A stretch of DNA of 64,000 nucleotides from Euprymna scolopes. Lineage: Eukaryota. Shown here in pieces: positions 32,716 through 33,717 of this stretch. The notes below the pieces were generated by a model. That model did not search any database and was not told the DNA's origin. It saw nothing but the letters and a program-made list of their open reading frames with translations. The stretch lies in NCBI GenBank assembly GCA_053919585.1, contig CM132785.1. The stretch is one strand, 5' to 3'. Position numbers and translations under genes: made by a program. How positions within the stretch are numbered: position 1 is the stretch's first letter; every line of letters starts with the position of its first letter.

Positions 32716-32807
<92 letters not shown>

Positions 32808-32932
32808 TATTGTTGTTTTTTCAAGCGATAAACACGGTTAATATTGGCTCCGCCTCGAAGCTCATTTTTTTATTTACTTAGAAAGTCGCCCTTTAATTTG
32901 TTTTTATTTATTTATTATTTTTAAACAGTAAT

Positions 32933-32977
32933 CTACGTACACGCGTGTTTCGAGGTAATTACCTCTCGTCAGCGTAG
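32933..32977 (-). ncRNA. Type I hammerhead ribozyme with palindromic stem III
   Basis: Minus strand CUACG CUGACGA GAGGU-AAUU-ACCUC GAA ACAC-GC-GUGU A^ CGUAG; all stems are perfect Watson-Crick. Confidence 0.93.
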
Positions 32978-32985
32978 CTCAGCTG

Positions 32986-33053
32986 TTTCTAGGGATCGAA
33001 CGTCAGACCATGTTTACCACAGTCCGGTGGCTTAACCGTTAGGCCACAAACCC
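32986..33053 (-). mobile_element. tRNA-derived (His-like, GTG) SINE head immediately upstream of the HHR
   Basis: Minus strand GGGTTTGTGGCCTAACGGTTAAGCCACCGGACTGTGG...GACGTTCGATCCCTAG has A-box TGGCCTAACGG and B-box GTTCGATCCC, with an imperfect cloverleaf. Confidence 0.7.
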
Positions 33054-33717
33054 TATATATATATATATTCTTCCACTTATAAAATATATGCTNNNNNNNN
33101 NNNNNNNNNNNNNNNNNNNNNNNNNNNNNNNNNNNNNNNNNNNNNNNNNNNNNNNNNNNNNNNNNNNNNNNNNNNNNNNNNNNNNNNNNNNNNNNNNNNN
33201 NNNNNNNNNNNNNNNNNNNNNNNNNNNNNNNNNNNNNNNNNNNNNNNNNNNNNNNNNNNNNNNNNNNNNNNNNNNNNNNNNNNNNNNNNNNNNNNNNNNN
33301 NNNNNNNNNNNNNNNNNNNNNNNNNNNNNNNNNNNNNNNNNNNNNNNGTCTTAGACCTGTTCCGTCTGCCATTCAACGACACACCTGTAAGATAAAATAA
33401 ATTTGAAAGAAAAAATATGAATATCTATTTCGCTTTATAATGTTTACTACTGATACACACACGCATACATATATATGTTGCATAGGAGACATATTTGGAG
33501 ATTATTGAATAAAAGTGGTCACCGTAACCAAAACACCGAATATATTGCATAGGGGGCATTCATATTGGAGAGAGACGGGGACATGTAATACAAGATATAC
33601 GATGGTGATGAGGGAGAGAAGACCTTAGACATTTATACCGTTATTTGATGTTTTTTCTTATAACACAGATAGCGAGGAGGGAGTGGGTGATCAGTTCTTA
33701 TAATACAGAGGGGACAG

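What the first reader, a model, noticed from the sequence alone, without database searches (positions are those of the whole stretch)
32933..33053. Independent second family with the same architecture: tRNA(His-like) head directly fused to a perfect hammerhead
Seen: minus-strand A/B-box head (32986-33053), then ~8 nt later CUACG CUGACGA GAGGUAAUUACCUC GAA ACACGCGUGU A^CGUAG with all-Watson-Crick stems. Both stem II and stem III are palindromic, and the sequence is unrelated to the 322-bp family. Inference: the tRNA-promoter+HHR design arose or was captured more than once in this genome, suggesting a recurrent class of ribozyme-SINEs.
Basis: partly seen in the sequence, partly recalled or inferred. 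Interest (0 to 1): 0.82.

Follow-up and report, generated by a model that had tools for sequence, protein, structure and literature searches.

The report
tRNA-headed hammerhead retrozyme copy in (TA)n
This is one young copy of a roughly 315-bp non-coding mobile element that joins tRNA-gene promoter boxes to a self-cutting hammerhead RNA and inserts into TA microsatellites; the design is already known from blood flukes, but it recurs here in several unrelated families.

Summary
On the minus strand, 33053-32982 is a decayed tRNA-like segment with A and B boxes in exact tRNA register. 32977-32933 is a complete type I hammerhead ribozyme (HHR) that would cut between 32938 and 32937.

It is not a classical SINE. 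The unit is about 313-318 bp and insertions are circularly permuted: 5' ends fall anywhere, 3' ends cluster at two sites, half the copies exceed one unit, about 30% carry an inverted partial copy, and almost all lie in (TA)n. These are the insertion marks of Penelope-like elements, so I read it as an animal "retrozyme" resembling schistosome Sm-alpha.

The genome holds at least 1,311 copies of this HHR. Diverged sister families keep the ribozyme core and show compensatory changes in helix II and in the helix III palindrome.

A B box followed by an HHR occurs 2,981 times (control 0), in four clearly unrelated groups and a doubtful fifth. In one group Rfam calls both the tRNA and the hammerhead.

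The "His-like" label and the helix II palindrome are not conserved. Promoter activity, cleavage and circular RNA are inferred, not shown. This scan has already noted the architecture many times elsewhere in this genome. Verdict: a new family of a known kind.

The parts
32801..33053 (-). One copy of family F2a. It is 5'-truncated exactly at nt 1 of the head. It runs through the HHR and the A-rich body to ...AACAATAACAATCT. That is about 0.8 of the 313-318-bp unit; the roughly 45-nt linker is missing.
   Evidence: BLAST against the unit gives 33058-32804 at 87% identity. Boundaries were read.
32982..33053 (-). Decayed tRNA-derived segment (the 'head').
   Evidence: The A and B boxes are in tRNA register. 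It is homologous to the heads of sister families F2b and F2c. Neither ARAGORN nor Rfam tRNA calls it.
33036..33046 (-). A-box-like motif TGGCCTAACGG, element nt 8-18.
   Evidence: The TRGC..A..GG positions are conserved across F2a, F2b and F2c.
32992..33002 (-). B-box-like motif CGTTCGATCCC, element nt 52-62. The major subfamily has a perfect GGTTCGATCC.
   Evidence: At 33002 most RNA-library contigs carry the G variant.
32933..32977 (-). Type I hammerhead ribozyme: helix I, CUGACGA, helix II, GAA, helix III and A17.
   Evidence: Pair counts and covariation on alignment A1.
32937..32938 (-). Predicted self-cleavage site, between A17 at 32938 and C1.1 at 32937.
   Evidence: Inferred from the hammerhead consensus. 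Not tested.
32939..32948 (-). Helix III, a 10-nt palindrome ACACGCGUGU. It forms 3 bp plus a CGCG loop within one molecule, or 10 bp between two units.
   Evidence: In co-folding, the dimer gains about -15 kcal/mol and only the dimer forms helix III. The palindrome is kept as ACAUGCAUGU in F2c and F2d, and as ACACGUGU in one F2b copy (L081).
32923..32990 (-). Extended helix I: AAACAG.UGA.CUACG pairs with CGUAG.UUA.CUGUUU. It includes the T-run, which is TTT here (32925-32923) and TTTT in the consensus.
32771..32803 (.). (CT)n run between the element's 3' end (...AATCT) and the (TA)n tract.
   Evidence: The same junction type occurs in L004, L038 and L042.
32719..32770 (.). (TA)n microsatellite on the 3' side of the insertion.
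33054..33070 (.). Short (TA)n directly abutting nt 1 of the head on the 5' side of the insertion.

Best explanation
The stretch is one young, 5'-truncated insertion of a non-autonomous, non-coding retroelement of the animal 'retrozyme' kind. I call the family F2a. Its unit is about 313-318 bp.

Within the unit a decayed tRNA-derived segment that keeps Pol III A and B boxes lies directly upstream of a type I hammerhead ribozyme. The rest of the unit is A-rich.

Proposed cycle:
1. Arrays or longer-than-unit copies are transcribed, either from the internal A/B boxes or by read-through.
2. The hammerhead cuts at A|C. Helix III is a conserved palindrome, so two units probably pair to form a double hammerhead.
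3. Unit-length RNA is closed into a circle by the host tRNA ligase (RtcB).
4. A reverse transcriptase of a Penelope-like element copies circular or multimeric RNA. Synthesis is primed from a nicked (TA)n tract, using microhomology at two UAUA-like places in the unit.
5. This yields permuted copies of 0.5-2.3 units, often with an inverted partial copy at the 5' side.

Shown here: the anatomy, the copy number, the linkage of head and ribozyme, the insertion signature, and structural conservation of the ribozyme across diverged families.

Inferred, not shown: cleavage, dimer use, circular RNA, Pol III promoter activity, and the identity of the reverse transcriptase.
For: Copies and linkage:
- 1,311 HHR copies with <=3 mismatches, 55 of them exact, against a control of 0.
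- All 40 top-scoring matches cover both head and HHR at 95-98% identity.

Unit and insertions:
- The unit and its permutation were defined from 50 copies.
- 3' ends: 33 of 50 lie at unit positions u152-166 and 14 of 50 at u34-48. Each cluster runs up to a TATA-like stretch of the unit (u161-166, u41-47).
- 5' ends are spread over the whole unit.
- Lengths are 151-710 bp; 26 of 50 copies exceed one unit and so span an intact cleavage site.
- About 15 of 49 have an adjacent inverted partial copy, and the flanks are (TA)n.
- This matches the published marks of Penelope-like elements: partial tandems, an inverted 5'-truncated copy, and a bias for (TA)n (PMC8557442).

Candidate partner:
- The genome holds 15,395 first-look GIY-YIG candidates. 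All 150 scored are above the Pfam cut-off, and many sit in uninterrupted frames of about 800-870 aa arranged as tandem or inverted neighbours.

Ribozyme:
- Across F2a-F2e, 93.6% of cells pair, against 20-43% when the partners are slid.
- There are compensatory double changes in helix II (AU<->GC in 6 sequences, GC<->AU in 3) and at the centre of the helix III palindrome (CG<->UA in 5).
- The core is invariant except N7 (C, U or A) and H17 (A or C; a single G occurs in one decayed copy, L016).
- In co-folding, only the dimer forms helix III.

Other support:
- F2a and F2c are homologous over the whole unit at about 65-70% identity.
- The architecture recurs in unrelated families and is confirmed by Rfam in family F5.
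- The family is present in contigs of RNA-labelled libraries from two studies. One contig carries a permuted ('goes back 240') joint, and others run on into the linker.
- Literature: Sm-alpha is a tRNA-Gln-derived, SINE-like element with an HHR (PMC2770079). Animal retrozymes and RtcB circularisation are described in PMC7229834.
Against: - No cleavage, circular RNA or Pol III transcription is shown. The RNA evidence consists of assembled contigs only. These cannot show ends or strand, and DNA carry-over or read-through transcripts are not excluded.
- Neither Rfam model reaches its gathering score on this family.
- The consensus has TTTT only 12 nt after the cleavage site. A Pol III transcript started at the head might therefore end after about 130 nt and never cover the unit. 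The same T-run also pairs in helix I, so its conservation is ambiguous.
- Most insertions carry a single HHR and could not release a unit-length RNA on their own.
- A 3-bp helix III with a tetraloop is close to the invertebrate HHRs that cleave well as monomers (PMC7229834), so a need for dimers is not established.
- The two changes that keep the palindrome in F2c are both CpG transitions, the commonest kind of substitution.
- No Penelope element was tied to this family by shared sequence.
Confidence: 0.7

Rival explanations
1. It is a classical tRNA-derived SINE, transcribed by Pol III from the head and copied by a LINE. The hammerhead-like stretch is an incidental or relic passenger.
For: A and B boxes lie in tRNA register. 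Three of 50 copies, the window copy among them, start within a few bases of head nt 1. LINEs that target microsatellites are known (my own knowledge, not checked here). A LINE-like RT open frame with a poly(A) tail lies beside one copy (L015).
Against: 5' ends are spread over the whole unit. 26 of 50 copies exceed one unit, with sequence upstream of the head that is the 3' part of the unit. There is no poly(A) or LINE-like tail. About 30% carry inverted partial copies. The HHR core and pairing are kept across families that differ by 30-35%.
Confidence: 0.07
2. It is a retrozyme, but it is mobilised by a (TA)n-specific non-LTR (LINE) reverse transcriptase rather than by a Penelope-like element.
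For: The 3' ends are defined, the 5' ends vary, and there is microhomology to (TA)n. These features fit any target-primed reverse transcription. No Penelope element was linked by sequence.
Against: Partial tandems plus an adjacent inverted 5'-truncated copy are the published hallmark of Penelope-like elements. The genome has very many GIY-YIG endonuclease frames that look intact. The preprint 10.64898/2026.07.22.740005 ties animal retrozymes to these elements.
Confidence: 0.12
3. It is satellite-like DNA spread at the DNA level, by unequal exchange or by excision and reinsertion of circular DNA, with no RNA intermediate. The head and HHR are conserved only because the copies are young.
For: Tandem arrays exist (L016, L024, L032, L039, L042, L043). 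Within a subfamily, copies differ by only about 1-3%.
Against: More than 1,300 dispersed sites lie on all large contigs, in both orientations at equal frequency (675/636). The 3' ends are preferred and the 5' ends variable. Ribozyme pairing is kept by compensatory changes between old families.
Confidence: 0.06
4. The head-HHR-T-run module is a small Pol III gene in its own right. It would make a roughly 130-nt tRNA-like-plus-ribozyme RNA that trims its own 3' trailer. The rest of the unit is only a carrier.
For: The order A box, B box, HHR, T-run is kept in F2a, b, c and e, and in the 322-bp family. TTTT lies 12 nt after the cleavage site.
Against: The T-run is part of helix I, so it is conserved for pairing anyway. 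It is absent behind the HHR in families F3 and F5. The whole unit, not only the module, is homologous between F2a and F2c. In this window's copy the run is only TTT.
Confidence: 0.1

Closest known systems
Sm-alpha / Sj-alpha elements of Schistosoma (SINE-like; tRNA-derived part plus type I hammerhead; about 335 bp)
   Same: A tRNA-derived segment and a type I HHR share one short non-coding unit of about 320-335 bp. Copy number is in the thousands, and both monomers and tandem copies occur (PMC2770079; PMC8490949).
   Different: The host phylum differs (flatworm against mollusc). Sm-alpha is tRNA-Gln-like and is called by tRNAscan, whereas this head is too decayed for any tRNA model. Here insertion is into (TA)n with permuted ends, and helix III is a 10-nt palindrome.
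Animal non-LTR retrozymes (coral, mussel, axolotl; Cervera and de la Pena 2020)
   Same: Type I HHR in AT-rich, non-coding repeats of 170-400 bp. Both tandem and dispersed copies occur. The proposed cycle runs through self-cleaved, RtcB-ligated circular RNA.
   Different: A review states that retrozymes seem to carry no promoter (PMC7761336), whereas this family and its neighbours keep Pol III A and B boxes. The palindromic helix III recalls the amphibian dimer type more than the invertebrate type.
Newt and axolotl satellite-2 hammerheads (HHR_Amex1)
   Same: The unit is about 330 bp. Helix III is weak and capped by a palindromic tetraloop, which allows a double hammerhead.
   Different: Helix III here has 3 bp rather than 1-2. 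The amphibian repeats have no tRNA-like head.
[quoted passage not shown]
   Same: Type I HHRs linked to Penelope-type insertions (tandem or inverted copies, microsatellite targets) and thought to act as dimers.
   Different: Those ribozymes largely lack helix III and the loop contacts, and they sit in a coding element. This one is a full three-helix HHR in a non-coding unit.

Membership tests
Hammerhead ribozyme, type I | Conserved core: C3-U4-G5-A6-N7-G8-A9, G12-A13-A14, the A15.1-U16.1 pair, and H17 not G. | tested here: met
   Read directly. These positions are invariant across 24 modules of five subfamilies, apart from N7 and H17.
Hammerhead ribozyme, type I | Three helices around the core, with helix I open, and pairing supported by covariation. 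| tested here: met
   93.6% of cells pair, against 20-43% when partners are slid. Four pairs show changes on both sides, in helices I and II and in the helix III palindrome. These represent few independent events, roughly one per subfamily.
Hammerhead ribozyme, type I | Reaches the gathering score of Rfam RF00163. | tested here: not met
   18.7 bits against a gathering score of 34. The model misaligns the longer helices II and III. Sister family F5 scores 45 bits.
Hammerhead ribozyme, type I | Site-specific self-cleavage. | not testable with these tools
   This needs an in vitro transcription assay.
Animal non-LTR retrozyme | Non-coding, AT-rich repeat of 170-400 bp carrying a type I HHR, found in tandem and dispersed copies. 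| tested here: met
   The unit is 313-329 bp. Arrays of 2 or more units occur in 9 of 49 loci. There is no ORF.
Animal non-LTR retrozyme | Expressed as unit-length linear and circular RNA. | tested here: inconclusive
   The family is present in contigs of RNA libraries, with one permuted joint. Contigs cannot tell a circle from a tandem copy or from DNA carry-over.
Sm-alpha-like tRNA-headed hammerhead element | A tRNA-derived segment with Pol III A and B boxes in the same unit as the HHR. | tested here: met
   The boxes lie at nt 8-18 and 52-62. They are conserved in F2a, F2b and F2c. The B box + HHR pattern occurs 2,981 times against 0 for the control.
Sm-alpha-like tRNA-headed hammerhead element | Sequence homology to Sm-alpha or Sj-alpha. 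| not tested
tRNA gene or pseudogene | A cloverleaf recognised by ARAGORN or Rfam RF00005. | tested here: not met
   There are no calls in the window or in 29 family loci. The anticodon stem and the acceptor 3' strand are absent.
Classical LINE-dependent tRNA-SINE | A fixed 5' end at the head, a LINE-derived or poly(A) tail, and target-site duplications. | tested here: not met
   5' ends are spread over the unit, and there are two A/T-rich 3' ends that run into (TA)n. Duplications cannot be read in (TA)n.
Penelope-dependent non-autonomous element | Partial tandem copies, an adjacent inverted 5'-truncated copy, and a microsatellite target. | tested here: met
   compared with PMC8557442.
Penelope-dependent non-autonomous element | Sequence or ribozyme shared with an autonomous Penelope-like element of the same genome. 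| not tested
   Only the abundance of GIY-YIG frames was shown. No further genome letters could be fetched.

The most novel reading that the evidence does not exclude
The A and B boxes are working Pol III promoters. This mollusc would then carry a whole guild of self-transcribing retrozymes, built at least three times on different tRNA-derived heads (F1, F2, F5). In the F2 superfamily, the conserved helix III palindrome would make cleavage depend on two units pairing, so that only multimeric (tandem or rolling-circle) transcripts are processed into circles. That would contradict the published view that retrozymes lack promoters of their own. It would also offer a natural Pol III cassette for making circular RNA.
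Probability: 0.33. Interest if true: 0.62.

Novelty: new member of a known kind. Interest (0 to 1): 0.42.

Why it matters
Hammerhead retrozymes are a source of abundant small circular RNAs in animals. How they are transcribed is an open point, and a 2020 review says they seem to have no promoter.

This genome holds thousands of units in several unrelated families. They share little beyond the order: tRNA-type promoter boxes, then a hammerhead. That is comparative evidence that the pairing is selected, which extends the schistosome Sm-alpha design to a second phylum.

The family studied here adds two things. It has a well-defined insertion signature: priming at two UAUA-like sites of a circular or multimeric template into (TA)n. 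It also has a palindromic helix III kept by compensatory change, which can be tested directly in a monomer-versus-dimer cleavage assay.

It is not a new class of element.

Tried and rejected
- Donor tRNA. A search of the genome with Rfam tRNA returned only one giant Thr/Lys tRNA cluster. The donor stays unknown. 'His-like' is rejected because the triplet is not conserved.
- Per-site conservation among F2a copies. The HHR looks more conserved than its flanks, but the copies were fished with the HHR and filtered on its core. The test is circular and is not used as evidence.
- Homology between F1 and F2. None is detectable beyond the B box.
- ORFs. The window's four ORFs of 150 aa or more have no Pfam match. 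Among the fetched loci only L015 has a reverse-transcriptase frame. It has a poly(A) tail and looks like a neighbouring LINE, not a partner.
- Rfam on other family loci returned mainly microsatellite artefacts called as miRNAs.
- Read laying. Only assembled contigs were available, so starts, ends, strand and circles could not be read. A second run search showed one run of another organism label holding a small share of the F2c unit; this was not followed up.
- Papers not held: Ferbeyre 1998, Hammann 2012 and Lunse 2017.
- The N run at 33093-33347 was not filled. Locus L001, fetched by the copy search, was printed once with flanks and showed letters there as a by-product. I set them aside, left L001 out of all later scripts, and rest nothing in this report on them.

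Full report
**1. What is at the coordinates**

Read on the minus strand, the stretch opens with a 72-nt tRNA-like segment at 33053-32982.
- TGGCCTAACGG lies at nt 8-18 and CGTTCGATCCC at nt 52-62. These are the places of the A and B boxes in a tRNA gene.
- A complete type I hammerhead follows: CUACG / CUGACGA / GAGGU-AAUU-ACCUC / GAA / ACACGCGUGU / A / CGUAG, at 32977-32933. The predicted cut lies between 32938 and 32937.
- Helix I continues through two bulges as far as 32990/32923.
- Every core position is canonical.

Curated tools do not see either part.
- ARAGORN finds no tRNA in the window.
- Rfam finds nothing at gathering score.
- In a local Rfam search, Hammerhead_1 reaches only 18.7 bits (gathering score 34, E 0.056), and tRNA is absent even at E<=10.

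It rests on motif anatomy, so the rest of the work tested it against other copies.

**2. It is a high-copy, young family, and head and ribozyme are always linked**
- The genome is 5.9 Gb. At least 46 numbered contigs carry copies. RNA runs that hold the family are labelled "mollusc metagenome". I infer a mollusc, probably a decapodiform cephalopod.
- A 136-nt query gave 2,091 first-look candidates. All 40 top-scoring matches cover head and HHR at 95-98% identity.
- The 45-nt HHR occurs 675 (+) and 636 (-) times with <=3 mismatches, 55 of them exact. The reversed control gives 0.
- The commonest variant has loop II AAUG and a perfect B box GGTTCGATCC. The window copy belongs to a minor variant with AAUU and CGTTCGATCC. 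RNA-library contigs agree: 71% of depth carries G at 32957 and 92% carries the G variant at 33002 in run X1.

**3. It is not a SINE with a 5' head**

Flanks of 50 copies were mapped on a unit consensus. The unit is 313-318 bp. Counting from the cleavage site (u1), it runs:
- helix I 3' strand plus TTTT;
- an A-rich body;
- ...AACAATAACAAAATCTA;
- a linker of about 45 nt;
- the head, from about u198;
- the HHR, ending at u313.

Insertions are circular permutations of this unit.
- 3' ends: 33 of 50 lie at u152-166 and 14 of 50 at u34-48. Each cluster runs up to a TATA-like stretch of the unit (u161-166, u41-47).
- 5' ends lie anywhere in the unit, with a cluster at u105-113 (AATATTAACC).
- Lengths run from 151 to 710 bp. 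26 of 50 copies exceed one unit and therefore contain an uncut cleavage site.
- Nine of 49 loci hold two or more HHRs.
- About 15 of 49 have an inverted partial copy at the 5' side.
- The flanks are almost always (TA)n.

Defined 3' ends, free 5' ends and longer-than-unit copies point to target-primed reverse transcription of a multimeric or circular template.

Partial tandems, an inverted 5'-truncated copy and a (TA)n bias are the published marks of Penelope-like elements (PMC8557442).

The genome has 15,395 first-look GIY-YIG candidates. All 150 scored pass the Pfam cut-off. Many lie in uninterrupted frames of about 800-870 aa arranged as tandem or inverted neighbours.

The window copy starts exactly at head nt 1, next to (TA)n. 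It ends at ...AACAATAACAATCT, followed by (CT)n and then (TA)n. It is therefore a truncated copy of about 0.8 unit. The visible 5' junction lies before the N run at 33093-33347. I did not read or fill that run.

**4. The ribozyme is conserved as a structure**

A pattern search and 20 fetched loci revealed diverged sister families, F2b to F2e.
- F2b/c alone has 1,147 exact copies of a 21-mer spanning helix I and the core.
- F2c is homologous to F2a over the whole unit, 329 against 313 bp, at about 65-70% identity.

On an alignment of 24 HHR modules (A1), counting pairs gave the following.
- 93.6% of cells form standard pairs, against 20-43% when the partners are slid.
- Helix II changes from GAGGU/ACCUC to GGAG/CUCC and GGGG/CCCC. 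Two of its pairs change on both sides.
- The CUGANGA box, GAA, A15.1 and U16.1 never change.
- Only N7 (C, U or A) and H17 (A or C; a single G occurs in one decayed copy, L016) vary. These are the two positions a hammerhead allows to vary.
- Helix III stays palindromic: ACACGCGUGU in F2a and F2e, ACAUGCAUGU in F2c and F2d, and ACACGUGU in one F2b copy.
- The central pair of that palindrome cannot form within a hairpin.

In co-folding, the single module lacks helix III (-18.5 to -19.9 kcal/mol). Two modules form a 10-bp intermolecular helix III with both cores, at -51.9 to -54.7 kcal/mol, a gain of about -15.

This favours a double hammerhead, as in newt and axolotl repeats (PMC7229834). Two cautions apply. 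Both changes in F2c are CpG transitions. And a 3-bp helix III with a tetraloop may also work as a monomer.

**5. The head**
- Heads of F2a, F2b and F2c align. They share the A-box positions, GGACUG, and GTTCGANNCC.
- The D-stem is kept with a compensatory change: GCCU/AGGC in F2a against GCGU/ACGC in F2c. I read this from the sequences.
- The anticodon stem and the acceptor 3' strand are gone.
- The triplet at the anticodon position is GTG only in F2a, and GAA or AAA in F2b and F2c.
- 'His-like' is therefore not a meaningful label, and the donor remains unknown.
- What has been preserved is mainly the promoter boxes, not a tRNA fold. This mildly favours a promoter role, but no transcription data support it.
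- A complication is the TTTT 12 nt after the cleavage site. It could stop Pol III after about 130 nt. It also pairs with AAA in the extended helix I, which by itself explains its conservation.

**6. The architecture recurs**
- B box + 10-40 nt + CUGANGA + 8-22 nt + GAAAC occurs 2,981 times, against 0 for the control.
- The listed hits fall into the F2 superfamily, relatives of the 322-bp family (F1), and groups F3, F4 (doubtful) and F5.
- In F5 (L100), Rfam calls Hammerhead_1 at 45 bits (GA 34). It also calls a tRNA match at 35.8 bits (GA 29), 10 nt upstream on the same strand.
- The F1 and F2 units share nothing detectable beyond the B box.
Whether the families arose independently or diverged long ago cannot be settled here.

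**7. RNA**
- Contigs of two RNA-labelled studies (oligo-dT and poly(A) libraries) and of several unlabelled runs carry the family.
- Some contigs continue from the head into the linker, and from the 3' end into ...AATCTAAATT.
- One contig shows a 'goes back 240' joint.
- This is compatible with tandem or circular RNA. It does not exclude DNA carry-over or read-through transcripts. Raw reads were not available for laying.

**8. Comparison with what is known**
- The closest precedent is schistosome Sm-alpha/Sj-alpha: SINE-like, tRNA-Gln-derived, carrying a type I HHR (PMC2770079; PMC8490949).
- The element class is the animal non-LTR retrozyme (PMC7229834). A 2026 preprint argues that these are non-autonomous derivatives of Penelope-like elements (10.64898/2026.07.22.740005).
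- A 2020 review states that retrozymes seem to lack promoters (PMC7761336). The boxes here would be an exception, as in Sm-alpha.
- For cephalopods I found only a count of 235 Rfam hammerheads in the giant squid genome, without characterisation (PMC6962438).
- This scan's own notes already describe tRNA-headed hammerhead retrozymes of 322, 286 and 327 bp elsewhere in this genome, and reach the same classification. I treated those notes as leads. My results agree with them.

**9. Verdict**

This is a real, well-preserved copy of a new family, and member of a new superfamily, of a known kind of element. The features particular to this family are:
- the palindromic helix III, kept by compensatory change;
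- the two-site, microhomology-type 3' junctions;
- (CT)n or (TCTA)n stutters at some junctions.

Function (cleavage, circles, Pol III drive, Penelope partner) is inferred and can be tested at the bench.

Noticed in passing
window 32771-32803; also L004, L038, L042 ((CT)n) and L036, L049 ((TCTA)n) at the element's 3' junction: In at least 6 of 50 copies, a short tandem run that repeats the element's own last letters lies between the element and the (TA)n tract. The unit ends in ...AATCT(A), and the run is (CT)n or (TCTA)n. It looks like stuttering of the reverse transcriptase at initiation, which is of interest because Penelope RTs are relatives of telomerase.
   Followed up: partly
L100:488-598 (-) and L099:525-569 (+) (G000 C2:1.62 Mb, C1:178.16 Mb): This is another family (F5). 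Rfam calls a canonical Hammerhead_1 (45 and 33.9 bits). In L100 it also calls an adjacent tRNA match (35.8 bits), whose head looks tRNA-Ala(TGC)-like. It is the cleanest example of the architecture in this genome.
   Followed up: partly
G000 C11:1.68-2.16 Mb (loci L051-L080): A giant tRNA gene cluster. 61 of the 62 scored Rfam tRNA hits lie here, at 64-80 bits. ARAGORN finds 124 tRNAs in 30 loci. Among the 63 distinct sequences are 41 Thr(TGT), 15 Thr(AGT), 5 Lys(TTT), 1 Thr(CGT) and 1 Ser(ACT).
   Followed up: no
G000, e.g. C12:14496712-14504984 and C13:17111032-17117229: GIY-YIG endonuclease matches lie in uninterrupted frames of about 806 aa, arranged as close tandem or inverted neighbours. 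The genome has 15,395 first-look candidates. These are probably young Penelope-like elements and candidate partners of the hammerhead families.
   Followed up: no
L097, L098 (G000 C1:148.63 Mb, C2:47.07 Mb): A repeated element (F4) has CUGAUGA, a 21-nt GC-rich helix II and GAAAC, preceded by GGTTCGAGACC. It may be a different hammerhead-bearing repeat. The B-box match may be chance.
   Followed up: no
L015:1882-3132 (-): A 417-aa open frame with a Pfam RVT_1 match (E 2.8e-31) and a poly(A) tail lies about 200 bp from an F2a copy. It looks like a neighbouring LINE, unrelated to the element.
   Followed up: partly
window 33061-33092 (-): An 8-nt match (TTTATAAG) to the unit's linker lies 22 nt upstream of the head, beyond the short (TA)n. 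It could be chance in AT-rich DNA, or a remnant of a longer copy. The next bases are masked (N), so this was left open.
   Followed up: no
L003, L005, L007, L021, L037, L044 (5' side of F2a copies): Several fold-back junctions between the forward copy and its inverted partial copy fall in the D-loop palindrome TTAACCG/CGGTTAA or inside the HHR. This suggests template switching at self-complementary sites.
   Followed up: no
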